A stretch of 64,000 bases of DNA, from assembly GCA_965202585.1 (NCBI GenBank), contig OZ241833.1:30938001-31002000 (forward strand), given 5' to 3'. This document shows, piece by piece, positions 1-56,785 of the stretch. This DNA comes from Thalia democratica (taxonomy: Eukaryota). The notes beneath the pieces were generated by a model, which worked only from the letters and a program-made list of their open reading frames with translations, did not search any database and had not been told where the DNA came from. The position numbers were made by a program, and so were the translations under genes. Each line of letters begins with the position of its first letter. The first letter of the stretch is position 1.

Positions 1-775
1 TGGAACTGATTACAATACCTTTTCAAACTCTTAAAAAAATTACAACTAATATTTAGCATTTATACCTAGAGCTTAATTAAAAGAGGTTCAATATCAAGAG
101 TTAATTATTGTAGAATTCATAATTTGATAAACATTTAATAAATAATTTAATGACTAAAACAACAATAACCATAAATATCCATGACTTCAAAACCCCATTA
201 TGTGTTTTTATATATAAAATTTAAAAAAATATATAATGATTAGTATTAAAATACATCCAGGTATAAAGAAGTGAGCCAAAATTAAGTTTAAATGTTTAAA
301 AATAGTAAAGTTTGACTATATTTAAACACTTGATATAAATAATTGACAAAAATAAATTGTATTCTTAGTTAGAAAAAACCTGTATCTCATTCTAAACTTA
401 ATGGAACTGATTACAATACCTTTTCAAACTCTTAAAAAAATTACAACTAATATTTAGCTTTTATACCTAGAGCTTAATTAAAAGAGGTTCAATATCAAGA
501 GTTAATTATTGTAGAATTCATAATTTGATAAACATTTAATAAATAATTTAATGACTAAAACAACAATAACCATCAATATCCATGACTTCAAAACCCCATT
601 ATGTGTTTTTATATATAAAATTTAAAAAAATATATAATGATTAGTATTAAAATACATCCAGGTATAAAGAAGTGAGCCAAAATTAAGTTTAAATGTTTAA
701 AAATAGTAAAGTTTGACTATATTTAAACACTTGATATAAATAATTGACAAAAATAAATTGTATTCTTAGTTAGAA
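1..775. repeat. Tandem duplication, 401-bp period (copy 1 at 1-401, partial copy 2 at 402-775); may extend beyond the window start
   Basis: tggaactgattacaatacc at 1 and 402; copies near-identical (two substitutions noticed). Confidence 0.93.
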
Positions 776-1504
776 TTGAATATAAAAGAGTATATTAGAA
801 ATACATGTATTTAAAAGACCTAAAATATATTTTTTAACATATAACCAGACTTTAAAATAAATGATGTTTTGAATATTACTTAATACAACACTTAAAGTTA
901 TACAATTATTTTCAACTACATATATGCATGGTAGGAAACAAGATTTAAAAATTTATTGCAAAATAATCTGAGCATAATTTCTAATCAAAATAAAGGTTAA
1001 ATGGCTTAAATTAAAAGGAGTTCTTATCAAATTGGAACACTAGAATTTTTAGTAATACATTTTAATAATAAATAAACTAAGGCCACATTGGCTGGCAAGC
1101 GAATCAAGCTAGGTGTTATACTTACTTATTTACTACAGGATTTCTTCTATTGAAAACTGTGTTTGATTTTTTAATGTTTGAATTATTTTATTAAAAAACA
1201 CTATATCTCGAAATTATTAAGACATTTATTTTTTTATTGTAAACAATTGCTTTTTTCTACTTGAATTCAAAGGTGCTTTCAGAGAAATGCAAAGTTTTTA
1301 AGGGACACGCAGCTCAAGTTTCCAACTAGAACCCTTTTTTTTCAACCTAAAATTACAAAAAATATTCTGACTGATGTCACATTAATTTAAAAAAAAAATA
1401 GACTCTTACAGTTATGAGTTTTTTAAACTACTTATTTTAATTTTTGGTAATCAAAATATACATTCAACAACATATCTTATTTGAGAATAGTTGTAAACAT
1501 GCAG

Positions 1505-1680
1505 GGCTTCACCAAGATGGTTGATCGCCTGGTTACATCCGGGCGTGTGTTGTGCGATCTGAAGATTTCCGCCAAGGAGCTGATAAGGTGCAAGAGCTAC
1601 GACCTGACCACTCTGGCGCAACATGTTCTCAACCAGGGACGCATGGAGCTGAAACCGGAACTCGTGCCGTCCATGTACAA
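1505..1680 (+). CDS. POLA1: POLA1 exon A ([34 protein letters not shown]...SMY)
   Basis: catgcag acceptor, AA|GTTTGT donor; [12 protein letters not shown] motif. Confidence 0.92.
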
Positions 1681-4600
1681 GTTTGTGTGGTTTTTGTTTA
1701 TTGAAAATGAACTTTCAAACTAAATAAATATTTTTTATGTTGTTTGTACAAGTTTGTGTGTTTTTTTTTGAAACTTAACTCTAAGGTTGTTTATATGTTT
1801 GGTTGTATGATCTTCCTGTGTTCGGGCTTTTGTCTGTGTAGTTTTCTGGATACAATTTAATTATCAGAAAATGTTTAGCTGCATGTAAAATAAAATGAGT
1901 ATAAAATGCTTAAATTTAAGTTAAGATGTACAAAAAGTTTTTTAAATAAATATAATTATCTTAAAAAAGGAATTTGATATCTAAAGTAAACTTAAATATG
2001 TCTTTGCAACTATGAATTATTTTTTAGACCTTTGAGTTTCACTAGTTTAATCTTAAAGACTGTAATTAAAAGGTTTTTGTTTTATGTTTATACTGTAGTA
2101 TGCAATTGTAAGATAATTAAAGAAAAGTCAGTAAAAAATGTAAAATTTTGTTTTTACCAATAAAGTTGATGACATATTATGGACCACAAAATAAAAACAT
2201 CATAAGTACAATAAAAGTAACAAAATACAATAAAAAATCTCATTTGAAAGTGAATAAATTAAATTATACAAAACTGACTGAAGAGCAAAGTTCTTTATGG
2301 ATAAATTAAAATTTAAACTGAAAAGACAACAGTTGAAATATTTTATAACAAATTAAAACTTACTGTTTCATTATTTTATTGTCAAATAAAAGTATCTTGT
2401 GATATGATTTTTAAGCCAAAATATGTAAACTTTAAAGATTGCTGATCAAATAAAAAAACTCAAGCATATTATGCCAAAACAATATTTTATCATGATAAAT
2501 CCAAGCCAGTATAGTGTCTGTTATTGAAATTAATTTTACAGTTTTGACAAAGGCTTGTTAAAGAAAAGTTTTATTTTAAGATATGAAGTTGCTTAAGTAA
2601 TAAATCATCAGGTTTAAACCACAATGCAATCAGTCAACAGTATATGTAGTTTGAACAAACTTTTTAAACTAAATAAATAATGAAAAAATCTCAATGGTAA
2701 AACATTGTTCACTAAAAAAATATATATAAAAATAGTTTAAAGTGAATACTTGATAAATATTCTTTAATGTAAATCTCAATAAACTGAATAAAATTTAAAT
2801 GAAAACAGTTTATATATCTATGAAGTTAAAGTAAAATCATTTGATTAAAGTACTTATAAACTTGAAAGAATTAAGTTACTGAAAATATTTTTGTTTGAAA
2901 TTTTTAGCAAATCAATGTATCATGAAATTTAAAGTGGTTCATTCATGAAGATAACTGTTATAAGCTGTTGGCAATGAAAATTTTTTTTTTTGAAATAGCA
3001 GCACAAAGAAAAAAAAATTCTAAGATAATTTTTTAAAGTCTATTAAAACTTACATGATACAGATTAAATCGGTTTTTTGGTGTGAATTTTTAATAAATTA
3101 ACAAAAAAAAAGCACTTGAGCCACTTTAAAGTGTAAAGATGGCTCACTATTGAAAATTTAGGAAGCCTGTAATTGTTTTCAAGTTGGCCAAACTTGTAAA
3201 TTAAATTGATTTTCAAGTATAAGTTGCTAGTGCGTAAATTGCTGTGATTTATAACTCTTTAGATTTTTATTTGAAACAGCAGCGCAAAGATTAATTAGTA
3301 CAAGTTAAAATCACACAACAAACTTGTGAACTATAATAAATTATTTTTTCATTTTTTATCTTGAATGTAATAGTTTAGCTTTAACATTTTAATGTCAGCA
3401 TTTTGAAACAGTATAAAATCATACTTTAGGTGTTAAGCTTTAAAAAAATAGTAGATTACAACATTAGAACAATTATTTTTTTGTCAATTCCTCTTTAAAC
3501 AGAAATGATGTTCTTGTGGTATTCACAATCTCAGGGTGGTTATTCGAAAATCCTGCGAATTTGTATTACACATTTATATACAGCGGACAAATTTTATTTA
3601 ATTGGGAATTAAAAAAAAATATGTATTGTTATGTAAAGAGTAAAACAATACGTCTAAAATAATACTTAACTAGAGAGTTTAGAACAAATAAATAAGACAC
3701 AGTAATCTATCCACTAATAGGAGATTGATAATTAATAATTTATTATTTTTGAGAATAAACAATTACTCAGTTTCACCGCAGAGCGGATTTTCAAATTGTA
3801 AATCTGTAGTAAAATAATAATATTAAAAATGACAAATATTTAGAAATTGGTTTGAGTTAAGCTTATATAAAAAAAAATTTAAAAAAAATAAATAAAAATT
3901 AAGAATAATATTAATGTAAGACAACCTTTAATTTTAAAACTATCAAATTATAGTCTACAAACAATACAATTAAACCATAGTATACTGTGGGGTATTGATA
4001 TCTAATGGATTTAAAGAGATAAAAACTTTTACAGAGTTAGAAGTTATGGAGTAGTATATACATATTATTAAGCACACAGTTCTAATAATAAATTAATAAT
4101 GTTCAAAATAAAACCAGGGAGTAAGCATTAAAAAATTTTATGAAAGCATTGTTGTTGTTATTGTTAACACAGATGTATTATGATGACAAAGTATAAAATG
4201 GCTTTTTGTGAAAAATTTTAGATAAGCAACAAATAGAATGAAGGTTAGATTTCAGATGCTAAATTTAAAAAATAAGATAAACATTGAATATATTTAGTTG
4301 AGAGATAATCAAAGAGAGTATAAACTACTAATAATTCAACTCAAGAAAAAAAAAAAAATAAATTATAATATATGTACTAATTCTCCAATAATTATGATTT
4401 ACAACTGGGAATGGGTATATTATAATGTATGCACAATTTATCTTATATCTTAATAGAATATATTTAACTAATCAACAGACTTGAAAAAATAAAAATAAAA
4501 TAGTTTTAACAGTTTAAGACTGAGGATGGGAATAGTATTATAATACATGCACAAATAATAAAATATTTTAATATAATTGATACCTATGTGAGTTATAAAT

Positions 4601-7600
4601 TATAAATATTCATTTAAGTAATGTGGGCATTGGGTTATCAGTTCGTTTCTCTTGTTTAAGGCTTTTCTTTTGTCTGCTAGGGCTATATGGAGTCTTTCTA
4701 GGTTACATAAAGTGCACATGTTAGTATGGTTTGAGTTAGATTTTACTGATTCTACTATTTTCCATTCAATTGAGTATTTTATTTGGTTACTGTATAGATC
4801 CCATAGATGATTTGCAAGTTGGGTACAATTTTTGGGTTTGCTTTTAAAAGGTTTTGGGAAAGAGGTTTTGTGTTCATTATATCTGGACTTGAATGTTCTT
4901 TTGGTTGAACCAATATAAATTTTATGGTCATTTACGGATGTGGAGACTTTAGCTTGATATATTACATTACTTAGGCAACACTTGTTATCAACGGGGCAGT
5001 TTGTTTTTATTCTACAATTACAAAGTTTTTCGTTTTTATCTGATTTTTTCGTGAGTTTTTTGTTGTGGGAATTTATAAGGGCCATAATATTTGGTGTGCA
5101 GCAGTATGATATTTTTATAGAATTTCTGTTGATTATTTTATGATAGATGGTGTCTTTTTTAAAATGTTTATCTACTAAATCCAGGAAAATTTTGCCAATT
5201 TTAGTCTTTACAGATTTACAGAAGGGGGGATTGTAATAAATGCAATTTCTTTTTCTAATTTTGTTAATGTTTGTACTATTAAATTGTTTGTAGGTTAAAT
5301 TATATTTAAAATTACTTTTATTTAATGCGTTTTGGTATAAGCCCTTGATGTTATTAAAAACTTCTTCATTTTTAGATAGTTTGCATAATCTTTTTTCAAT
5401 CATTTTTGGTATATTGTTACGTATATTTTTAGGGTGGTTGGAATTGTTGTTGATGTAGCTAGTTTTGGAATTAGGTTTACGGTAGGGACTGTAGGTGTTT
5501 AGGGATAGGTCCAGGGAGACGTCAAGAAATTCTGTGCTAGTGTTGCCAATATCTATTGTAATTTCGAAACCTATTGAAGACATTTTTTTATAAGGGACTT
5601 TTTAATTTTTTCAAGTGTGGTTCCAGAGGATTGTTTTATGATTGCAAGACCATCATCTCTATATAAGCCTATATTTGATGGGCCTGTGATTGGGGATATT
5701 TCGCTTAGGATGTATAAGCCTATTAAATCGCAGACCTCGGCGCCCTGGAATGAACCCATAGCTATATCAAAGTTATTGTTATTTGTTTTTTTGGTCCAGA
5801 TTCTGTTGTCATAAAATATAATGGTTTGGCAAGTGTGCATAAGGGTGTCTATTTCTTGTTTGTTGAAGGTTGTGTATTTTTCTGCAAATTTAATAGCTTT
5901 GGTGAGGTGTTCTTTTTTTATTGAAGGATAAAAATTTTTTATATCAAAATTAATGAAGCATTTATGGGATTTATCATTGAAATTATTGAACCACTTTATA
6001 ACTTCTTCAGAATTTAACCATTGGGTAAGATTTGATTTTGATCTTATTTTGTCAATGTGGGTTTGTAAATTTATTTTAGCAATTTTACCAAGAAAAGATT
6101 TTGATGGGTTGATTGTTCTGCAACTAATGTTATGGGGGAAATTAGGTTTGTGGTCCTTGACAGTTATGAATGCTTCAGCTTTGAGGAACTTGGGAATCTT
6201 TCTATTTTTTGTATTTTTTGTATTATAGTTGGATAATATTTTGGTAGCTTCTTCATTAATTTTAATTGTTGGATCATTAGGTTTTATTGAATATTCACTT
6301 GTTAAATTATTAATAAGTAGTTTATACTCTCTTTGATTATCTCTCAACTAAATATATTCAATGTTTATCTTATTTTTTAAATTTAGCATCTGAAATCTAA
6401 CCTTCATTCTATTTGTTGCTTATCTAAAATTTTTCACAAAAAGCCATTTTATACTTTGTCATCATAATACATCTGTGTTAACAATAACAACAACAATGCT
6501 TTCATAAAATTTTTTAATGCTTACTCCCTGGTTTTATTTTGAACATTATTAATTTATTATTAGAACTGTGTGCTTAATAATATGTATATACTACTCCATA
6601 ACTTCTAACTCTGTAAAAGTTTTTATCTCTTTAAATCCATTAGATATCAATACCCCACAGTATACTATGGTTTAATTGTATTGTTTGTAGACTATAATTT
6701 GATAGTTTTAAAATTAAAGGTTGTCTTACATTAATATTATTCTTAATTTTTATTTATTTTTTTTAAATTTTTTTTTATATAAGCTTAACTCAAACCAATT
6801 TCTAAATATTTGTCATTTTTAATATTATTATTTTACTACAGATTTACAATTTGAAAATCCGCTCTGCGGTGAAACTGAGTAATTGTTTATTCTCAAAAAT
6901 AATAAATTATTAAAATAATACTTACTAAATCCAACACTTGAAATGGAAAAAGTTATAAATATAGTTTTACAAAATTTTCAGATGTTTCAAACCTTTTTCT
7001 CCTCGTGTTTATCCCGTGCGCTTCTTTTAAAATTCCAACACATAAACCCGTCCAATCTTATTCAATTGGCGGACCACACGCGTTTGCGGAATGATACACA
7101 CTTGAAATTAAACACGTTTACATAAATTTGCAAAATTATCACAGGGTTGCCACTTTACCTGCAAACCTGGAAAATCCTGGAGTTTGACAATTTACGCAAA
7201 AAAAAACCTGGAATTTTAACAATTTTCACATGTTCAGTAGTAAAATTACCATTTGAATCAAAAAATCTATCATATAAATAAAAAAAATTTGTCATCAAAA
7301 AATTTTTTTTTATTAAAAAATATATTTTAAATAACTTTACAGTATCTTTTCAATGTTTTTATACTATTTAACACAGTTTCTTACCTTAAACTTAACTTTA
7401 AACTAAAAATAGACCCAAAAATGTGTACTGTTAAAAACCTGGAAGAAATTAGGAAAGCCTGGAAAGTTTTTAAAAAACGAGTGGCAACCCTTTTATCATT
7501 AAATTAATTTTTTTTAAACTAAATTGTTTCTCAGAAACCTGAACAGTCTCAAACAGTTGGTGGACAACATGTTTTACACACTGTTATTAACTTTTATTCC

Positions 7601-10600
7601 GCAGAAACCTAAACAGTCTGATACAGTTGGTGGACCACATATTTTACACACTATTTTATTAACTTTTATTCCGCAGAAACCTAAACAGTCTGATACAGTT
7701 GGTGGACCACATATTTTACACACTATTTTATTAATTTTTATTCCTCAGAAACCTGAACAGTCTGATACAGTTGGTGGACCACATATTTTACACACTATCA
7801 TTAATTTTTATTCCGCAGAAACCTGAACAGTCTGATACAGTTGGTGGACCACATATTTTACACACTATTATTAATTTTTATTCCGCAGAAACCTGAACAG
7901 CCTCATACAGTCAGTGTACCATAGTATTTTACACACTATTATTAATTTTTATTCCACAGAAACCTGAACAGTCTGATACAGTTGGTGGACCACATATTTT
8001 ACACACTATCATTAATTTTTATTCCGCAGAAACCTGAACAGTCTGATACAGTTGGTGGACCACATATTTTACACACTATTATTAATTTTTATTCCGCAGA
8101 AACCTGAACAGCCTCATACAGTCAGTGTACCATAGTATTTTACACACTATTATTAATTTTTATTCCACAGAAACCTTAACAGCCTGATACAGTTGGCGGA
8201 CCACATATTTTACACACTATTATTAATTTTTATTCCGCAGAAACCTGAACAGTCTCATACAGTTGGTGGACCACACTTTGGTGGACGCCAAGCTCGCGTT
8301 GGACCTCACGTGCGAGCTTCAAGCCCTGCCACTCGCCCTGCAGATAACCAGCATTGCCGGTAAGCATGTGTATATATTAGATTTTAATAAATTAGTTGTG
8401 GAAAAATTAGGAGTAATGTTTTTGAAAATAATTTAATATTCCTGCCACTTGCTCTGCAGATAACCAGCATGTTGTTTAGGTTGTTGAAATTTCAATATGC
8501 TTTCTAATTAAAACGAGCAGTAGTGCATATTACAGTTTAGTTTATAAACTTGCGGAAGTAACAGAGTTCTTTAAAGGTAAAAAACAAGTCCAGAGGTAGT
8601 TTGAAAAGCTACATGTTTAAGATCCAAACAAATATTTTATGAAAACTTTACAGACTGTTTACCACGTTTTATATGAGGTTGTAACAATCAAATAAAATAT
8701 TCTTTAAGAATAAAGTGTATAAAATTGTTTAAATACCGTTGTTTATAAATAGTATATTTCTTTAAAATAGCAATAAAGTTAAAAAATACTTCGACGATTT
8801 TATTGGCTTTACGAAAGGCAATTAATGCTTAATATTCTACGTTCAAGTCTGTTTGATACAAACCTTGTATTCGTGTGTGCAACTACATTAGCTTAAATGG
8901 AATATAAATGCATTATTTAATTATTAGCTTAATTAAACTACATTGGATCAACAGGGAACGTGTTGTCGCGTACCCTGATGGGAGGCAGAGCCGAAAGAAA
9001 CGAGTTTTTATTACTCCACGCCTTCCACGAACTTAGCTACATTGCGCCAGAAAAAAGTAAGATGTTTTGTTCAGTTTCGTTTAATGTTTGAATAATTTAT
9101 TTTGTTTATTGTCACCCTAATAAAAGATGTTTGTCATTTTTTCAAGAGAATTTAAAATATTAAGTCATTTAAAATATTATCACTTTTTAAAGAAGGATTT
9201 TCGATTTATTAAAATTAAAGAAAATTGTTTAATTGTGAATTTTTTCCTTAAACTAATAAATAAGTATATATATATGAAAATAACATAGTATAAGTGTTTT
9301 GAAAACATTTTTAGATGTTAGTAGTTAAACAAATTAATTTAATATTGCTTTGCAAAATAGTTAGGTCTTTAAAGGTAAAGTTAAAAATTTCTTTGTTAAA
9401 CTGAATAAGTAGTGAGTAAATGTGCATTAATTAGATTATGAAAATTAGTTTTCTTTATTTCATTCAACAGTTTTTAAGAAGAAAGAAACGAAACAAGACA
9501 CAACGAAAGCAGGTAAAAATTTACACAAAATATATATTTAAAATATAGAAACACCTGGTAAAAATTTTTGTAAAGTTTTTCAAGTAAAGTTTGACAGCGT
9601 AATTAATAATAAAATATTATACAGCGAAATAAGTAAATTAAAACCGCAGAAAAGTTTTACAAAATGTTCAATTATGTTCAAAATCGTGAAAAAGTTTACG
9701 TGAGCTGTTTATTACAAATAATTTAAGTGAATAAAATACGGTAGAATTTTATAAAAACTAAAAATAAAAACTTTAAGTTTACAAGAAACACAGAAAAGTT
9801 TTAAATGTCTAGAGTTTTTTTGTTCAAATTACGTCAATTTTAGAAATTTCTATGCGCTTTAAATAGATTGATTTTTCAAACCTTGAGAAGACATCAAGGA
9901 TAAAAAAATCTTTGAGCCTGTTCATAAATCGAGGGAAAGTAAATTCTAAACAAAGTTATTAAAGCTATTTTGTAAGTTTTATTTCGGCAAATATTGCCAA
10001 GTAAATCTTAAAATAAGCAAAAGTTTGTTGAAAATGTCAACAAAAAAATAAATACAAACTTCAACATTATTGAAAATTATTCAGGTGATTTACGCCAAAA
10101 AGTTTGCTTAAACTCTCAGCGAAATTATTCAAAGGGGGATAAAAAAAAATTCAGTTTTTTTTTCAATGACGAATCGCGGAATTTCCATTTTAAACTCTGT
10201 GACTCACGCAGAAATTTTCCACTTTTTTTTTCTTCGAAGGATTTAAAAACGCTTTTTGCGTCAAAACTGGAATTTTTATTAATTTTCTTGAATGTGGGTT
10301 TGTTTACCCGACTTGTAGAGTAACTGAATCGAACTCTGAAAATGCTAGTTGTATCCAAATTATGTTGTGATTTAGTTAATCGGTTTAGAGCTGAATATAT
10401 ATTTATTTCTGTATATAACTATCGGTAAAACGTTATCTGAAAAGTTTAAACTGAAACTGTTTGATTGTTCATCTTTTTAAATACAAGATTAAATAATTAT
10501 AAGCAATGAATGTAAAATTTAATGTTTTGTGTTTTAGTGTTTTATTATCCAATTTAGCTAACTTTTGGCCTAATATACACTATAATATTTTATTTTAGTA

Positions 10601-13600
10601 GTTTATCATTGAAAAGCTTTTGTAATTGCTTTATAAAATACTGAAAAATGTATGTATGTATCTTAGAAATTAAATATATAAGTATTAAATATTTACTTGC
10701 TAATTTTTAAAGTAATTAGTTTTATAGCTTGTTGAAAATTAGAACATAACATAACCTAGACAGACACATTTGAAAATAATTTTTTTTAAAAGTAAGTTAT
10801 ATAAACTTTTAGGTAATTTAGTTTTATTTATAAATTTAAAACAACTTTTGCAATAGTCGCGGAAATGTCATGTTATTGAAAAAATGTTTTTATGAGCTGA
10901 CAGCTGACTTAAGAATATTCAATTGTAAAAAAGCTTGAATAAACTTCCATAAATAATATTTTAAAAAACAATTAAAAATCTGTTAAAACTTTTTGTTTGT
11001 GGTTTTATAAAAAAAGGTTTTAATTTTGTAAATTAAGAAATTGTTGAATATAATACAAGTGTTAAAAAATTAAAAGTAGGTTGAAAAATGTAATACTTAT
11101 GATTTATATAAAGCTCAAAAATGAGTTATTTCTATATTTTGAATTAAAAAAACTGACTAGATTTCAAAAGTCATTTTAGTCTATAATAGTATGTTGTAGT
11201 TTATGCTTTAATCTTTAATTTTTTTTGTGAATCCCCTATGACCTTCAAAAGTTAAGTATAAAAAAATATTTTTCTCAAGAAACAGGTAATGCTTAAAAAA
11301 AACCCGTTTTTACCATATGAAAATGACCTTAAACAATAAACTTTAAAATCAAGCTGTGTATTTTACATAAAATAAAAAGTAATTTTTTATAAAATTTAAG
11401 TACCTAAATTTTTATGAATCCCCTATGACCCTAAAAAGTTTAGTATAAAAAAAAATTTTACAAGAAACAAAGCTTTAAAAATAAAATTACCAATCAAATA
11501 ATATTTTTACCTTAAATGAAAATGGCCTTAAACAACGAGCTGAACATTTTACATAAAAAAAAAAGAAAAAAGAAATATTTTTTTATTTCAAGTATTTTCA
11601 CCCGCAGGAAACGCGGGCAAGCCGAAGAAGAAGGCGGCGTACGAGGGGGGTTTGGTGCTGGCCCCCAAGAAGGGTTTCTACGACAAGTACATCTTGCTGC
11701 TGGACTTCAACTCCCTGTACCCGTCCATCATCCAGGAGTACAACATCTGCTTCACCACGCTGGAAACCAACCCGCCCGAGGGGCACCCCGAGGTTGGTAG
11801 GGAGTTGGTTGTTGTTGGGGAAGTTTGGGTGTTGTGAAGCGGGTATGGTACTTTTGTGTCGGGGAGTTGATAGACTTTGAAGCAAAAATAAATTTTGGTT
11901 AAAAAATCATAAAATGAAATGAAATTAATACTATTAATTTAATTTTAAATGCAATATTAGTCTGCAACTTATGTTTGTTGGAATGTGAAAAATAGAAAGT
12001 TCTAGTTATGATGATTCAAAAACTAAAAGTACAGTAGATAATTTATAAAAAAAAAGTCTAATAAAAAATATCATGTTATATAACAATATATGCTTATTAC
12101 TTGATGTATTTGATTAGATTGTATTGTTTTTAGGTAATTAGTAAAGTAAGAATTTATTTTTTGAGAGATATTGTATAACAAAGTAGTACATATTCAAATA
12201 AACAAAAAAAGCATTACTTAATTTTAACATAGGACGAGTTGTACATCCCAGAGGTTCCGGAGCAGGGTCTCGACGCTGGAGTTCTTCCGACTGAGATCAG
12301 GAAGCTGGTTGAAAGAAGAAGGGCAGTCAAGCAGATGATGAAGGGACAGATCAGCAAGGAACAGTATACTCAGGTGATTAGAAAAAAATAAAATAAAATT
12401 AGTAAGCAAGTGATGCACAACATTAAAGGGTAATAATAAAAGCAATAATTTTGTTGGAAGTTTACAAGTATTTGTATAAGATAATAGATAATAAAACAAA
12501 CTAAAAGTTGAGTTAGGTATATGCTTACTGTAAAAATAAATTTAAAACCATTTTGTTTTACTCGGTCGTTAATTTCACTATCATCATTGTTCATTTCATA
12601 ATTTTTTGTGAAATGGTTAATTTATTTATATTCATATCCACAGTACAAAACCCGTCATAAAGTGTTGAAATTTTCCTTCAGACTTGAGTCTTATTATCAT
12701 AATTTTAAAATTCCAGTTCTTCATGATTTTCCTGAAGTATTTTACTTATTACAATACATTTCCACAGTGTATTGTGATAAGTTGAGTCAGACGGGTGTCT
12801 AATGTAAAAATAAATTCAAAACCGTTTTGTTTTATTAAGTCGTTAATTTTTAATTTTAAATAAAATTTTAATAAAATTTAATTTTTAATTTGATTCATGT
12901 CCACAGTACGACATCCGCCAGAAAGCGCTGAAGCTGACCGCCAACTCGATGTACGGCTGCCTCGGCTTCCAAAACTCCAGGTTCTACGCGAAACCCCTCG
13001 CGGCCCTGGTCACCAGGAGGGGTAGGGAGGTGAGAATTGCTGTAAAATATTTGGTTTTTATAAAAAAAAACTGGTGGAACAGTTTAAAAATGTTCTAAAT
13101 AAGTCTATAAGGTACTTGTGTATTATGCTGAATATACATTTAAAACATTTTCGTAGTTTTGTCAGTTTCAAGATAAATAAAAGTGTTTAACAAGAAGTAA
13201 ATTGAGTGATAAGAAGCAGTTTTACTTGTACTTAAACTTATTTGCAATTTTTGTATAACTCAAAAGGTCTTATGGTAGTGAAAGTGCTTATATATACTTT
13301 AATCTCTACAGTTGCAATAAAAAATGCCACACAAATGGTACACAAAACATAAATTGCTTTTGAAATCGAGCATATTTCAGACTTCCTATATGGAAGCATA
13401 ACTTTTTGTTTTCCAAGTGTTAAATAAGTTAATTTAAGTTCAATTAATTCTCAAATAAATTGTTACCCAATATAAAAACGTGATGAGTAAATTGAGCTTC
13501 CTTTTTCAATCACGATCAACTTTGCTAATTTCAATCTAAAATGTTGGAAAATTAATGTTGCAATCAAATATCACCTCGGGATGTATTCAGCTTGTGTATA

Positions 13601-41393: not shown

Positions 41394-43437
41394 ATGTCAA
41401 ATTTCGGAATCGACAACATTTTGAACCAATCACGTCAGAGAATGATGAATTTTGGACCAACCAGAGATCGGGGAGATCATATGAACAACATGATGGCTTA
41501 CAGAGGGGGATTTGTTCAAGGTATATAAAAAAAGAAACAGTTATTGATATATTAATGTATAATAAAAAACTTTTGTATGACATTTTAAAGTTTTTATTTC
41601 AAAATAGGTTTAAGTTCGTATTAAAGTAAAACAGCTCCGTTTTACAAAAACAAAATAGGAAGTTGTTTGCATGTCTAATGAACTACAATAAGCAGTTTAG
41701 AGCTTAAGTAAAAGTTTTTTTTTAACTAAAAGTTTAAGTTTATTTAGAGTTTGCTTTAGTTATAATATAACTAGCTGTCCCTAAGTCGGTAAGTATATTA
41801 ATTTTAATTTTTATTAAACTTTAAATTAATTCGGCAAACTTTTACATTTAGAACATACATTTATAACTCCTTTATTTCGCACAAAACAAACTAAAAAAAC
41901 AAATCCCGCAGCTTTCCAACGGGACCAGAACGTCGTGAGGCCCTCGAAGCCGAAAGAAGAGCAACCGGCTCACAACAGCAAACCTCTGTACTTGAAGGAG
42001 GAACCGACGAACTGCAAAAAGTTCGACAGCAAACACCTCAACGAGGAAATTGTCAGAATCAGGGAGGCGCTGTTCAAGCGCAACCACCGGGACGCCCCCA
42101 ACCTGATACCGAGCAATCGTCAGCGCCCGGAAGAAGCCGAAATCGATTTGAAGCCGGGCTTTCGCTTCGACGCCGAAAAAAGAGCGAAAAGTTTGATTTT
42201 CGGGCAGAAAATAAGCGGTGTCAGGCCGGCAGCGACGGCGGAGCACAAAAGCCATCAGCAGGAAAAAACATGGCCGCACGCCGCTAAAGACGATTTTCGC
42301 CGGAGGCCGGAACAGAAGACGCCGCCGAGGCTGTTGTTCGACTGCAAAAAGGAACTTTCTCCGCAAAACTCCTCCACCGCAAACCAAGAGCTCCTCCACC
42401 TGAGCCTGCAGAACCTGTACGCCAAGAACAAGGAGAAACCCGAAATGTTCCCTCCTTCCTTTCGCCAGTCTCCAAAAAGTTTCGCCAGAGGTGCTTCCCC
42501 GGACGGTTATGGCGGGAGATTGGAGGACCTGCAAACTCCTCCGAAGAAGAACCGCAGGTACAGGACCACTTTCACCTCCATGCAGCTCAACGACTTGGAG
42601 GGGGAGTTTCAGAGGGGCCAGTACCCTGACATTAACAGGAGGTTGGTTGCACCTACTACATAGTAATTTTTTTATGTGAAACGTTAATTTTTGAATCCAA
42701 GTACTTTAGTGAGCAACCGCTATACTCATAAATTGCTAAAGTTAATTTAAAGCGGCATAAGCAGTAAAAGCTACCTAAAAGCTATATTTTTCAAAACTTA
42801 AAGCGTTTACACAATTTTTTCATAAACTCGAATACAATAAACATTTTAAAAATCTTCGTTCAACCAATAAATAAAAACTAAATAAAAATGTAGATTTGTC
42901 TAAATTACAAAAATGCAACGTTGTTTTTAGAACAGTGTTATTTTACTATGTAAATAATTTTTAAAGTAATCAATCCAAGCAAACGCAATTATTACAATGA
43001 TAATTAAAATAAGTGATTTCTTCAGAGAGGAGTTGGCCAGGAAAACAGGTCTGACGGAATCCAGGGTTCAGGTGTGGTTCCAAAACCGCCGCGCCAAGGA
43101 GCGCAAAACCGTCAAACAAACTCGGATGTTTCACGGGGGATTTCCCCTATTCGCAACCACCCCCTTCTACCAGCAGCAGATTGCCAGGGCGACGGCGAGT
43201 TACGGGGTCCAGCCGCAGTTCGCCCCCACTCCCTACCAGCACTACCTGGGGGCCCTGTGCGCGTTGCTAAGGAGCCACGTGAATCCCCTTCAGATGATGG
43301 CCTCGCAGAATTTCGGTTTCCACGGCAACCAGGCGAGGGTAAGCCCCCAAATGTTGCAGCAGATGGGGCTGCAGAGACCCACCTCAGATTTGAAGGAAAT
43401 GGTTCAAGAAGTTGTCAGGAGTAAAGAGGATAACTGA
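41394..43437 (+). CDS. arx: Paired-class Q50 homeobox gene, Arx/aristaless-like; exons 41394-41520, 41912-42641, 43026-43437
   Basis: N-terminus [10 protein letters not shown] (eh1/octapeptide); spliced homeodomain [30 protein letters not shown]|[27 protein letters not shown]; the phase-2 intron at R|EELA matches a vertebrate ARX intron position; exon phases are consistent. Orthology not tested by phylogeny; no clear OAR motif. Confidence 0.78.
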
Positions 43438-54363: not shown

Positions 54364-54990
54364 ACTTATTTAATTATATAAAAACTATAATTTAAACAGC
54401 TGTTTCACACATTGAAATGTAAAATTTCATGTGATCGTCAGTAAGTTACAGTTTATTATAATAGTGAACAGAAATTTCGATTTTAGAATTTTTATAATAA
54501 TTATGACGTAGTAATGGTACAGTTTATTGTACGATTAGCTGAATTTGAAATACGCTGTGAATGTTATTCTATGCTTTTTAGGAAAGTTTAAAAAGGTTAT
54601 TTTGGTAAAATGTTTTAAGCTATTAGAAAAAAAAATTAGGCTGTTGGGAAAAATGTTATAAAATGCTATAAAATACTCGTGTTTGCCGCTTCGATTTTAT
54701 TTTGTTTTAATATTTAGTTTGTTTTAATTTTGTTAAAAAAGTATTTTTGATAATGGATGCATATGTTTTGTCTTTCGCTTTTCTTGTTTAGTGTTACGTT
54801 CTTATCTGATTTTTCGATTTCTATTTTTTCTAAGTTACAAAGTTTGCAGCCGAATTTAGTATTGAATTTTAATTTTATCCTGTTCAATATTTCCCATTTA
54901 ATTTTGTAGTCTGTATTGTTATCTTTTAAGTTCCATATGTAATTCGCTAGTTCTGTTGTGTGTCTTTTGTTAATATTGTTGAAAATCATC
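54364..54990 (-). mobile_element. 3' fragment of a diverged Penelope-like element (GIY-YIG C-terminus, 3' UTR, hammerhead), inverted and fused to the next element
   Basis: Minus ORF TTELANYIWNLKDNNTDYKIKWEIL...CKLCNLEK...CIH, stop at 54714; followed by a hammerhead and (TA)n at ~54344-54363. Confidence 0.85.
54389..54447 (-). ncRNA. Minimal type I hammerhead ribozyme
   Basis: Minus strand: AACTTA-CTGACGA-T-CACATGAAAT(TTTAC)ATTTCAATGTG-T-GAA-AC(AGCT)GT-T-TAAATT; canonical core, stem I has one mismatch, GUU triplet. Confidence 0.8.
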
Positions 54991-56785
54991 ATTCAATAAT
55001 AAAAGGTAAAATTCCCAAACTTTCTCAACAACAATGTTACATTACTTTAAAAGATCATAAACCAAACTTCCCAAATAAACTAAGTTGTAGAATAATTAAT
55101 CCGGCAAAAACTTTTATTGGCAAACCTGCAAAAACTAATTTAGATAGAATCAACAATTTTATAAGATCAAAAAGTAATTTAATACAATGGAAAAACACTT
55201 ACGAGGTATTGAACTGGTTCAATAGCTTAAGCAATAAACCAACTTCAAGGTTTATCAAATTTGATATAGTGAGCTTTTATCCTGCCATCTCAGCAACAAT
55301 TTTGGAAAACTCCTTCAATTTTGCTGCAGGCCTAACTAAAATCACGGAAAATGAAAAAGAGCTAATCAGACATTGCTGTAAATCAATACTGTTCCACGAG
55401 GGTGAACCATGGTCAAAAAAGCATAACAAGAACAGCTTTGATATACCAATGGGAAGCTTTCATGGCGCAGAAATTTGCGAACTGGTTGGCCTATACATTT
55501 TAGATAAATTGAAGAAGGAAAAGATCTTTAGAGATGGTAATTTTGGTATATACCGTGACGATGGTTTAGCAGTGGTGGACATCCTACCGGGACCAGATAT
55601 GTAGAGAAAAGTCAAACATCTAAGAAAAGTCTTTAAAAACATTGGTTTTGATGTCACCATCGAAGCTAATCTGTTTGTAACAGACTTCTTAGATGTAACA
55701 TTAGATCTTCAAAATGAAAGCCATAAGCCGTATAGAAAACCAAATGCGCATACGGTTTATGTGAATAGCAAGTCAAACCATCCAGAGCATGTGTTAAAAC
55801 ACATACCGGTTGCAGTGAACAACCGCCTCCAGAAGATTTCTAGCAGTCAAAGCATTTTTAAGGAAACAACCCAACAATACCAGGAAGCTATAAGAGAAAG
55901 TGGATACGATCACGAGTTAGCCTATAGCTACAAAAACGAGAAGGGTAACAACAAGAAAAGAAGGAGAAGAAATATTTTATATTTCAACGCTCCATTCTGC
56001 AAAAGTGTGGCAACACGGGTTGGGAAGCGCTTCCTAGAGATTGTGGACAATAACTTTACTGTAAACCATCCATATTGTAAAGTTTTTAACAGGAAGACAC
56101 TAAAAGTGTCCTACTCCTGCATGCCAAACATGAAACAACTTATAATGGCACACAATCGAAAGATCTTAGACACGCAGTACAAAGAGAGGCGAATGTGTGA
56201 CTGCAAAAAACAAGAATGCCCGGTAAATGGAAGTTGCCTGATGGAAAATGTTATATATAAAGCGACAGTCATAACTGATAACCAGACCAAGTTTTATGTA
56301 GGCTCGACTGGACTATCGTTCAAGAATCGCTACACAAAGCACAAGTACAGCTTCAAACACGAAAAACATAAAAATACGACAACTTTGTCGCAGTACATTT
56401 GGAAACTAAAAAATAACGAAGTTAATTTTAAAATTCAGTGGGAAATATTAACAAGAACGAAAAATAAATACAGTTTAAAAAACGGATGTAAATTGTGCAA
56501 TGCGGAAAAAATCGAAATTTTAAAAGTTAAGAAATCGGAATCTCTAAACAAAAGAAACGAATTACAAACTGGCTGCATACATTATAGAAAGCAATTTATC
56601 TAAAAACTCTGTTAATAATTTTGTCTAAAATCAACTATCTATTATTACGTAATACCTAATTTTGTATAATTTTATTGCTGTACTTACAAGTTTGCTTTTC
56701 ATTGAATAAAACTTGGCTGAGGACGCGTATTAAACGCAGAAACAGCTGTACCAAGCAAAAGTTTATTTTGTGTATGTTATTTATA
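54991..56785 (+). mobile_element. 5'-truncated Penelope-like element (RT + GIY-YIG) with one in-frame TAG at 55602-55604
   Basis: YITLKDHKPNF, FDIVSFYPAI, MGSFHG, IYRDDGL, CDC-x5-CP-x4-C, FYVGSTG; frame is continuous across the TAG to the stop at 56603; ends in (TA)n. Confidence 0.93.
56712..56755 (+). ncRNA. Minimal type I hammerhead ribozyme in the element's 3' region
   Basis: CTTGG-CTGAGGA-C-GCGT(ATTAA)ACGC-A-GAA-AC(AGCT)GT-A-CCAAG; perfect 5-bp stem I, GUA triplet. Confidence 0.88.

What the first reader, a model, noticed from the sequence alone, without database searches (positions are those of the whole stretch)
7521..8359. Splice-acceptor minisatellite: ten decoy 3' splice sites stacked before an essential POLA1 exon
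Seen: each 70-72 bp unit is an intron tail (T-rich tract ending ...ttccgcag) plus the first ~34 nt of exon B; only the 11th copy (8241) continues into the exon. Offsets to the true start are 70, 141, 211, 281, 352, 422, 492, 564, 636 and 706 nt. The four in-frame decoys all meet a stop (TGA 8185-8187 at the latest) and the rest frameshift, so any decoy use destroys Pol alpha. Several decoy acceptors match the real one over their last ~30 nt. Inference: either splicing skips them by exon definition from the downstream GTAAGC donor or a discriminating exonic signal, or the array acts as a copy-number-tunable NMD rheostat on an essential replication gene. It is also a candidate route for intron expansion.
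Basis: partly seen in the sequence, partly recalled or inferred. Interest (0 to 1): 0.82.

Follow-up and report, generated by a model that had tools for sequence, protein, structure and literature searches.

The report
Splice-acceptor minisatellite in POLA1 intron
Ten extra head-to-tail copies of one splice junction sit in an intron of a pelagic tunicate's DNA polymerase alpha gene, yet the mRNA evidence shows only the last, genuine copy in use, so this is a good natural example of a rare but already described repeat type ("mirage" minisatellite), not a new regulatory device.

Summary
Window 7532-8275 is a tandem array of 10.5 units of 70-72 nt. Each unit is about 36 nt of intron tail ending in YAG plus the first 35 nt of a POLA1 exon (8241-8359). 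Ten upstream acceptor look-alikes lie at the stated offsets. All would give premature stops.

Three intronless metatranscriptome cDNAs from a sister taxon (95.6% exon identity) join 1680 directly to the 8241 equivalent. RNA contigs of the organism itself cover exons B and C but not the array. Animal orthologues align without gaps only with the 8241 acceptor.

DNA contig depth in two samples fits a multi-copy array, so it is not an assembly artefact. The same intron is about 81 nt and repeat-free in the ascidian Clavelina. The array is therefore a lineage-specific intron expansion.

This is the "mirage" kind of splice-junction minisatellite known from amphioxus genes; human F7 has a donor-side counterpart. 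This scan has already found the same kind at several other loci of this genome (AGBL5, ATG14, Pax, TTC39, HUWE1, ankyrin).

The NMD-rheostat idea has no support. How the last copy is chosen is inferred, probably by exon definition. Low-level decoy use was not excluded.

The parts
1500..1680 (+). POLA1 exon A (at least this part), ending ...ATGTACAA before donor gtttgt
   Evidence: cDNA L002 2135-2315 aligns here at 92%. The cDNAs show the junction 1680|8241.
1745..1766 (+). Single echo of the exon A donor junction (tacaa|gtttgtgtg), 71 nt into the intron
   Evidence: 22 nt, 95% identical to 1674-1695; sequence read.
1681..8240 (+). The 6560-nt intron (26% GC) that holds the array at its 3' end
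   Evidence: The orthologous Clavelina intron is about 81 nt.
7039..7078 (+). Old, decayed twelfth copy of the same junction; the AG is lost (cacat|aaaccc)
   Evidence: the repeat finder family D2, 63-78% to the units; sequence read.
7141..7492 (.). MITE-like insertion between the old copy and the array, with terminal inverted repeats CAGGGTTGCCACT / AGTGGCAACCCT
   Evidence: Inverted repeat I1. Contig depth is 1e5-1e6 against 43-109 for single-copy sequence in DNA runs.
7532..8275 (+). Tandem array of 10.5 units of 70-72 nt, each being the intron tail plus the first 35 nt of exon B. Decoy acceptor AGs end at 7534, 7604, 7676, 7748, 7818, 7888, 7959, 8029, 8099 and 8170.
7720..8141 (+). Two copies of a 211-nt three-unit block (7720-7930 and 7931-8141), 98% identical, marking the most recent expansion step
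   Evidence: the repeat finder D1. Units 5=8 and 6=9 are 100% identical; 7 and 10 are 96%.
8205..8240 (+). True 3' splice site: AT-rich tail, ttattccgcag, AG at 8239-8240. A 47-nt AG-free zone lies upstream.
   Evidence: Junction confirmed by cDNAs.
8241..8359 (+). POLA1 exon B (119 nt, 57% GC), encoding (K)[39 protein letters not shown](G)
   Evidence: The cDNA alignment shows five differences, all silent. The orthologue alignment has no gaps. RNA contig depth ends at 8359.
8360..8365 (+). Donor GTAAGC of exon B
   Evidence: The X9 loose end behind 8360 matches the exon C start of the L002-type cDNA.
8441..8470 (+). Echo of the 3' end of exon B (copy of 8325-8354) in the next intron, without an intact donor
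   Evidence: the repeat finder D3, 93%; blastn.
8955..9056 (+). POLA1 exon C ([33 protein letters not shown])
   Evidence: The X1 RNA depth boundaries match it.
9471..9516 (+). Small 46-nt POLA1 exon found only by cDNA mapping

Best explanation
This is a 'mirage' minisatellite. A segment of about 70 nt spanning the 3' splice junction of POLA1 exon B was duplicated in tandem. The segment holds about 36 nt of intron tail (branch-point-like TTAAT, pyrimidine tract, YAG) plus the first 35 nt of the exon.

The array was then expanded by unequal exchange or slippage. The last step was the duplication of a three-unit 211-nt block. Only the 3'-most copy is contiguous with the rest of the exon, so all upstream copies are read as intron. 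The net effect is about 0.7 kb of new intron, more when the older decayed copy is counted.

Shown:
- the structure of the array;
- its derivation from ancestral coding sequence;
- the 1680|8241 junction in mRNA of a sister taxon;
- the absence of array sequence from assembled RNA;
- its absence from an ascidian orthologue.

Inferred: the spliceosome ignores the ten look-alikes because 3' splice-site commitment here works by exon definition. U1 at the GTAAGC donor and factors on the GC-rich exon body (8276-8359, 62% GC) stabilise U2AF/U2 on the nearest upstream site, giving a 119-nt exon. A decoy-defined exon would be 189-825 nt long, AT-rich and full of internal 3' splice sites. Occasional decoy use would give premature stops and would probably be removed by NMD. 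That would be a small cost, not a function.
For: - Array and offsets.
- The exon-like half of the unit is real, conserved coding sequence. [13 protein letters not shown] aligns without gaps to LTSDSLLWLVEHT in Ciona and to 15 other animal POLA1 proteins. The in-frame AG 12 nt downstream would delete four residues that all orthologues have.
- Three intronless cDNA contigs from two JGI samples (L002, L005, L006) are 95.6% identical to the window's exons. All read ...CCATGTACAA|AAACCTGAACAG... without gaps and contain no array-specific motif.
- RNA-like run X1 of the same organism has depth 0 over 7592-8257. Depth of about 29 fits 8272-8359 and 8955-9056.
- Metatranscriptome X9 has depth 0 over 7592-8183 and about 257 on exon B. 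A loose end behind 8360 equals the start of exon C.
- DNA contig depth summed over the array equals about 0.72-0.77 kb of single-copy depth in X2. It is about 10-fold single-copy at 8265 in X5.
- Units 5=8 and 6=9 are identical, so the expansion is recent.
- Clavelina has the same intron position, about 81 nt, with no tandem repeats in 14.3 kb.
- Two further junction echoes lie in this window.
- The class is published: PMC3087553, PMC3902484. The F7 donor-side analogue is PMC1557585.
Against: - The cDNAs come from a sister taxon or divergent population. It is not known whether that genome carries the array.
- For the organism itself I have only assembled contigs. These drop rare isoforms, and the exon B contig starts at about 8272, probably a unitig break at the C8271T variant seen in X2. 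The 1680|8241 junction was therefore not read directly in this individual.
- The single read-laying run was swamped by the MITE at 7141-7492, so loose ends at the eleven acceptors were not listed.
- Exon definition as the discriminating mechanism is untested.
- Decoy 10 would still give a normal-sized 189-nt exon, so distance alone is a weak discriminator.
- NMD would hide decoy products.
Confidence: 0.8

Rival explanations
1. NMD rheostat: the decoys are used at a copy-number-dependent rate, and the unproductive isoforms tune polymerase alpha dosage.
For: Every decoy gives a premature stop upstream of many exon junctions. Decoys 6 and 9 are identical to the true site from -36 to +12. Rough depth sums suggest different array lengths in two samples.
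Against: No RNA contig covers the array in X1 or X9, although exon B depth is 29 and about 257. Three cDNAs show only the canonical junction. The array is absent from Clavelina. The same repeat type flanks other exons in this window and, by earlier notes of this scan, many unrelated genes. A gene-specific function is therefore not needed.
Confidence: 0.05
2. Assembly artefact: the array, or its length, was produced by mis-assembly of a shorter repeat.
For: No spanning read was seen. Logan contigs break inside the array.
Against: The units carry distinct variants in an ordered three-unit pattern. DNA contig depth over the array in X2 sums to about the assembled length. X5 shows about 10-fold depth on the shared part.
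Confidence: 0.03
3. Junction-linked process: the array is not just a tolerated random duplication. It would be the product of a mechanism tied to splice junctions. It would keep exchanging sequence with the coding head of the exon, so the first 35 nt of exon B would evolve in concert with non-coding copies.
For: The only large minisatellite among the POLA1 introns of the window sits on a junction, and two more junction echoes exist. At the two silent sites 8253 and 8256, all four combinations occur among the units. The sister taxon's real exon carries the combination of decoy 10.
Against: Survivorship explains the enrichment at junctions: duplications inside exons are lethal and purely intronic ones go unnoticed. 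Third-position excess among unit variants is weak (6 events at 12 sites against 5 at 23; my count). It is expected when a selected exon is compared with dead copies. Recurrent mutation can give four combinations.
Confidence: 0.12

Closest known systems
'Mirage' minisatellites of amphioxus (Adh3, globin BflGb6/BflGb9, troponin C, PGBD5), as described in PMC3087553 and PMC3902484
   Same: Both are tandem minisatellite units that each span an intron-exon boundary with its AG or GT signal. The authentic junction sits at the edge of the array. Regular splicing is not disturbed. Both show concerted evolution within the array. Mirages have been proposed as a route to intron growth or gain. BflGb6 is likewise acceptor-side (3' end of intron plus 5' part of exon).
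   Different: The host is a pelagic tunicate, not a lancelet. The unit is 70-72 nt with ten decoys, against 3-6 units of 150-160 nt in BflGb6. Length polymorphism and somatic instability, shown for Adh3, were not demonstrated here.
Human F7 intron 7 37-bp VNTR whose first unit spans the exon 7 donor (PMC1557585)
   Same: Both are a stack of splice-site copies identical to the authentic one that stay silent. The site adjoining the exon body is the one used. The pseudo-sites are functional in principle.
   Different: F7 repeats the donor and selection was shown experimentally to follow 5'-to-3' scanning. Here the acceptor is repeated, the site used is the last in transcription order, and no experiment exists.
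Intron creation or extension by tandem genomic duplication (PMC3265369; model in PMC3087553)
   Same: Duplication of a segment carrying splice signals adds intronic sequence in one step without destroying the reading frame.
   Different: No new intron was created here. An existing, ancient intron position (shared with Clavelina and with an unrelated animal, L001) was lengthened.
Regulated unproductive splicing (poison exons or alternative sites coupled to NMD)
   Same: Use of any decoy would give a premature stop.
   Different: No decoy isoform is seen in assembled RNA. The element is not conserved and not gene-specific.

Membership tests
Mirage minisatellite (tandem duplication of an intron-exon boundary) | Head-to-tail units of minisatellite size | tested here: met
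   Period 70, 10.5 copies, 91% matches, score 1224.
Mirage minisatellite (tandem duplication of an intron-exon boundary) | Each unit spans a real intron-exon boundary, including the splice signal | tested here: met
   Each unit is a 36-nt tail ending in YAG plus 35 nt identical or nearly identical to the exon head. The exon head is conserved POLA1 coding sequence.
Mirage minisatellite (tandem duplication of an intron-exon boundary) | The authentic junction is the terminal unit and is the one found in mRNA | tested here: met
   Three sister-taxon cDNAs join 1680 to the 8241 equivalent. The orthologue alignment has no gaps only with 8241.
Mirage minisatellite (tandem duplication of an intron-exon boundary) | The repeat does not generate aberrant transcripts | tested here: inconclusive
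   Array depth is 0 in RNA contigs of X1 and X9. Contigs drop rare isoforms, NMD would hide them, and junction reads in this organism were not obtained.
Mirage minisatellite (tandem duplication of an intron-exon boundary) | Length instability or polymorphism between alleles or individuals | tested here: inconclusive
   Depth sums give about 0.75 kb in X2 and about 2.0-2.2 kb in X5. The tool warns that contig depth is not a copy number, and there were no spanning reads.
Mirage minisatellite (tandem duplication of an intron-exon boundary) | Concerted evolution or homogenisation inside the array, with older units at the edge | tested here: met
   Units 5=8 and 6=9 are 100% identical. The first unit is only 62-73% identical to the rest. 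A still older copy lies at 7039.
Recursive splice site (ratchet point) | A 3' splice site directly followed by a regenerated 5' splice site (AG|GTRAGT) | tested here: not met
   Every AG is followed by AAACCT.
NMD-coupled regulated unproductive splicing | An unproductive isoform is detectable in RNA and the element is conserved | tested here: not met
   There is no array sequence in RNA contigs or cDNAs. The array is absent from Clavelina POLA1. The test is at the level of contigs only.
Structured RNA or microRNA precursor array | A stable fold or a match to an RNA family | tested here: not met
   No Rfam hit in 1-13000. Unit folds are -5 to -8 kcal/mol with z from -1.25 to +1.2.

The most novel reading that the evidence does not exclude
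The coding head of an essential exon may be part of the minisatellite and exchange sequence with its non-coding copies, because unequal exchange can slide the functional boundary along the array. Junction-centred duplications in this tunicate, and in the unrelated animal of locus L001, may arise by a process linked to splice junctions and not by chance plus survivorship. If so, this would be an active, observable engine of intron growth.
Probability: 0.12. Interest if true: 0.7.

Novelty: new member of a known kind. Interest (0 to 1): 0.38.

Why it matters
The array is a clean natural experiment in 3' splice-site choice. Two decoys are letter-for-letter identical to the real site from -36 to +12, yet the evidence shows only the last copy in mRNA. 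The deciding information must therefore lie in the exon body, the donor or position. A minigene series could map this.

It also records intron growth in progress. An ancient intron that is about 81 nt in an ascidian is 6.5 kb here, and part of the gain is junction copies of different ages.

As a single locus it adds little. The repeat class is published, and this scan has already reported larger examples in the same genome.

Tried and rejected
- **Read laying.** The stretch 7000-9200 included a very high-copy MITE. The tables of pieces, joints and loose ends were filled with its hits, and only the depth bins and a few rows were usable. The intron is too long (6561 nt) to lay both exons within the 6000-letter limit.
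- **Exon A peptide search.** Searching for short cDNA-derived peptides found nothing near-identical.
- **Exact look-up of two window ORFs.** Neither was on record.
- **Two scans of metagenome contigs.** One used a unit motif and one a degenerate exon B pattern. Both gave 0 hits.
- **The look-up of encoding contigs for the Ciona protein.** Not on record.
- **Alternative acceptor at 8253 (AG 8251-8252, in frame, 12 nt shorter).** I considered it because the X9 contig alignment starts at 8250. I rejected it because the cDNAs and all orthologues keep the four residues.
- **Units as micro-exons.** Rejected: no good donor lies inside a unit, 25 nt to the best GT is out of frame, and there is no RNA coverage.
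- **Recursive splicing.** Rejected (AG|AAACCT).
- **RNA structure or microRNA array.** Rejected.
- **Weak pairing of GGUGGA with UUCCGC, which could mask acceptors.** It is present for the true site too and is no better than shuffles.
- **Pfam on the two retroelement-like ORF pairs.** No hit.
Full report
**What is there**

Tandem Repeats Finder gives one array, 7532-8275, with period 70, 10.5 copies, 91% matches and score 1224. It also reports a 211-nt three-unit period at 94%.

The repeat finder puts twelve copies of the 40-nt core in register. Eleven lie 70-72 nt apart from 7530 to 8236, and one older copy lies at 7039-7078. I extracted the eleven sites. Each is an AT-rich tail ending in ttattccgcag, or in ctcag, cctcag or ccacag. 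The tail is followed by AAACCTGAACAG...GGACCACA.

After the eleventh site the sequence runs on into GC-rich coding sequence up to the donor GTAAGC at 8360. The offsets to 8241 are 706, 636, 564, 492, 422, 352, 281, 211, 141 and 70. Four offsets are in frame, and these meet stops at 7660, 7732, 7894 and 8185. The rest shift the frame.

Decoys 6 and 9 are identical to the true site from -36 to +12. Decoys 5 and 8 differ at two of 71 positions. Each acceptor has a 47-nt AG-free zone upstream.

**The gene and the true junction**

A phmmer search with the exon A peptide found POLA1 proteins. The best full-length one is the Ciona intestinalis DNA polymerase alpha catalytic subunit. tblastn placed the C-terminal half of the protein on the + strand of the window from 1505 to 32189.

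The peptide spliced at 1680|8241 aligns without a gap to 40-odd orthologues. In the multiple alignment, [15 protein letters not shown] lies over MFLTSDSLLWLVEHT (Ciona), MYSSSAQLLKLVDLT and so on. Two things follow:
- The exon-like half of the unit is ancestral coding sequence, so the repeat derives from the junction and not the other way round.
- The in-frame AG 12 nt downstream (exon start 8253) would delete four residues that all orthologues have.

**RNA evidence**

A region search with the Ciona protein returned P0164, a 1499-residue protein from a 4594-nt JGI contig. It is 97% identical to the spliced peptide and 100% identical over exon B. The contig (L002) is intronless and aligns to the window exon by exon at 89-100%.

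This gave exact exon borders: A to 1680, B 8241-8359, C 8955-9056, and a 46-nt exon at 9471-9516 that I had missed. At the junction it reads ...CCATGTACAA|AAACCTGAACAG.... All five differences in exon B are silent, and no array-specific motif occurs in the cDNA.

Two more full-length cDNAs in the same 90% cluster show the same junction without gaps. One comes from a second sample. These cDNAs are 95.6% identical to the window's exons. They belong to a sister taxon or a divergent population, and I do not know whether that genome has the array.

For the organism itself, the single read-laying run gave these results:
- Run X1 (contigs totalling 47 Mb, RNA-like) has depth 0 from 7592 to 8257.
- Its depth of 29.3 fits, by bin arithmetic, 8272-8359 and 8955-9056.
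- The start at 8272 is one base after a C8271T variant that the same organism's DNA run X2 carries. It is therefore most likely a unitig break, not a splice site.
- Metatranscriptome X9 has depth 0 from 7592 to 8183 and about 257 on exon B.
- A loose end behind 8360 in X9 equals the exon C start of the L002-type cDNA.

Assembled RNA therefore contains the exons and not the array. The 1680|8241 junction was not read directly in this individual, and rare or NMD-degraded decoy isoforms cannot be excluded.

**Is the array real DNA?**

In DNA run X2 a zero-mismatch contig covers 8328-9006 at depth 42.8. The depth summed over the array bins equals about 0.72-0.77 kb at that depth, against 744 nt assembled. 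One collapsed contig has depth 232.6.

In X5 ('organism B', a heterozygous close relative) single-copy depth is about 109. The part shared by all units has depth 1158.6 at 8265, and the sum corresponds to about 2.0-2.2 kb. The tool warns that contig depth is no copy number. I take this only as support for a multi-copy array in two samples and as a hint of length variation. The ordered unit variants also argue against an assembly artefact.

**History**

- Units 5 and 8 are identical, as are 6 and 9. Units 7 and 10 are 96% identical, and 7720-7930 against 7931-8141 is 98%. The last step was therefore a three-unit block duplication.
- Unit 1 is only 62-73% identical to the others.
- The copy at 7039-7078 has lost its AG. 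It is separated from the array by a MITE-like element at 7141-7492 with terminal inverted repeats. The element is present at enormous depth in the DNA runs.
- The same intron carries one echo of the exon A donor 71 nt downstream (1745-1766).
- The next intron carries an echo of the 3' end of exon B (8441-8470).
- In Clavelina lepadiformis the intron is at the same position, is about 81 nt long, and the whole 14.3-kb gene has no tandem repeat.

The array is thus a lineage-specific addition to an ancient intron that has grown to 6560 nt here.

**How it most likely works**

Origin by tandem duplication across the junction, followed by unequal exchange, follows from the anatomy. Such a duplication is tolerated because one intact copy remains attached to the exon.

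The choice of the last copy must rest on information outside -36..+12, since two decoys are identical there. The real exon is 119 nt and 57% GC, with a body of 62% GC, in a 26% GC intron. Decoy-defined exons would be 189-825 nt at 49% down to 38% GC and would contain further 3' splice sites.

Exon definition from the GTAAGC donor and the exon body is the simplest mechanism. It mirrors the human F7 case, where the donor adjoining the exon is chosen and identical downstream copies stay silent (PMC1557585). This step is inference.

**Comparison with what is known**

[quoted passage not shown] They were found again in globin, troponin C and PGBD5 genes. They do not disturb splicing, show concerted evolution and length instability, and were proposed as a source of intronic sequence (PMC3087553, PMC3902484). 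BflGb6 is an acceptor-side case like this one.

The present array meets the structural criteria. Polymorphism and complete silence of the decoys remain open. Earlier notes of this scan led me to the term. They report the same kind of repeat at AGBL5, ATG14, Pax, TTC39, HUWE1 and ankyrin loci of this genome. I did not re-check those loci.

**Rejected readings**

- Recursive splice sites: every AG is followed by AAACCT.
- Micro-exons.
- Structured RNA.
- The 8253 acceptor.
- Assembly artefact.

The NMD rheostat is not excluded by experiment, but nothing supports it.

**Verdict**

This is a new member of a known kind. It is useful as a natural test case for 3' splice-site choice and as a snapshot of intron growth, but it is not a new mechanism.

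Noticed in passing
L001:10136-11078 (ENA ERZ26696912 ctg95679, unidentified animal, 43% GC): The orthologous POLA1 intron (after ...KEMYG) is about 95% filled by roughly 17-19 tandem 48-52-nt copies of the last ~12 nt of the upstream exon plus a GTAAGT/GTAGGC donor. This is a donor-side mirage at the same intron in an unrelated animal, about 60-70% identical in protein to hemichordate, amphioxus and echinoderm POLA1.
   Followed up: partly
L001:17295-17862: A second donor-type array in the same gene. About 12 copies of a 46-nt unit repeat the exon end GAACACACACCCAGT plus GTAAGTA, right after the [10 protein letters not shown] exon. The 20-kb locus has 45 TRF rows in all.
   Followed up: partly
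window 7141-7492: MITE-like element with terminal inverted repeats CAGGGTTGCCACT / AGTGGCAACCCT, flanked by TTATCA on both sides. Contig depth is 1e5-1e6 in DNA runs against 43-109 for single copy. It is also abundant in RNA contigs.
   Followed up: partly
window 1745-1766: One echo of the exon A donor junction (tacaa|gtttgtgtg) lies 71 nt into the intron. The same intron therefore has junction copies at both ends.
   Followed up: partly
window 8441-8470: Copy of the last 30 nt of exon B (8325-8354, 93%) lies 116 nt downstream in the next intron, without an intact donor.
   Followed up: partly
window 8253 and 8256 and the equivalent sites of the ten decoys: At these two silent sites all four combinations occur among the units: TC, TG, CC and CG. 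The sister taxon's real exon carries CG, the state of decoy 10. Exchange between array and exon head, or recurrent mutation, could explain this.
   Followed up: partly
window 7518-8331, runs X2 and X5: Contig depth summed over the array corresponds to about 0.75 kb in organism A but about 2.0-2.2 kb in organism B. This hints at a roughly threefold longer array there. Contig depth is a poor copy-number measure.
   Followed up: no
window 9471-9516: A 46-nt POLA1 exon, invisible to protein-based mapping, is revealed by the cDNA contig.
   Followed up: yes
window 1-775: Tandem duplication with a 401-nt period, 1.9 copies, 99% identical, at the start of the window upstream of exon A.
   Followed up: no
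window 4600-6347 (-) and 54960-56603 (+): Two copies of a pair of long ORFs resemble a retroelement (by eye, a reverse-transcriptase-like part followed by a Cys-rich / GIY-YIG-like tail). Pfam gave no hit for the three ORFs tested. Other first-reader notes call the second one Penelope-like.
   Followed up: partly
L003 (Clavelina lepadiformis OX392441.1, POLA1 gene): The whole gene spans 13.9 kb with no tandem repeat found by TRF. The intron orthologous to 1681-8240 is about 81 nt.
   Followed up: yes
window 41935-43437: A paired-type homeobox gene lies downstream of POLA1 on the + strand (Pfam Homeodomain, E 7.8e-13).
   Followed up: no
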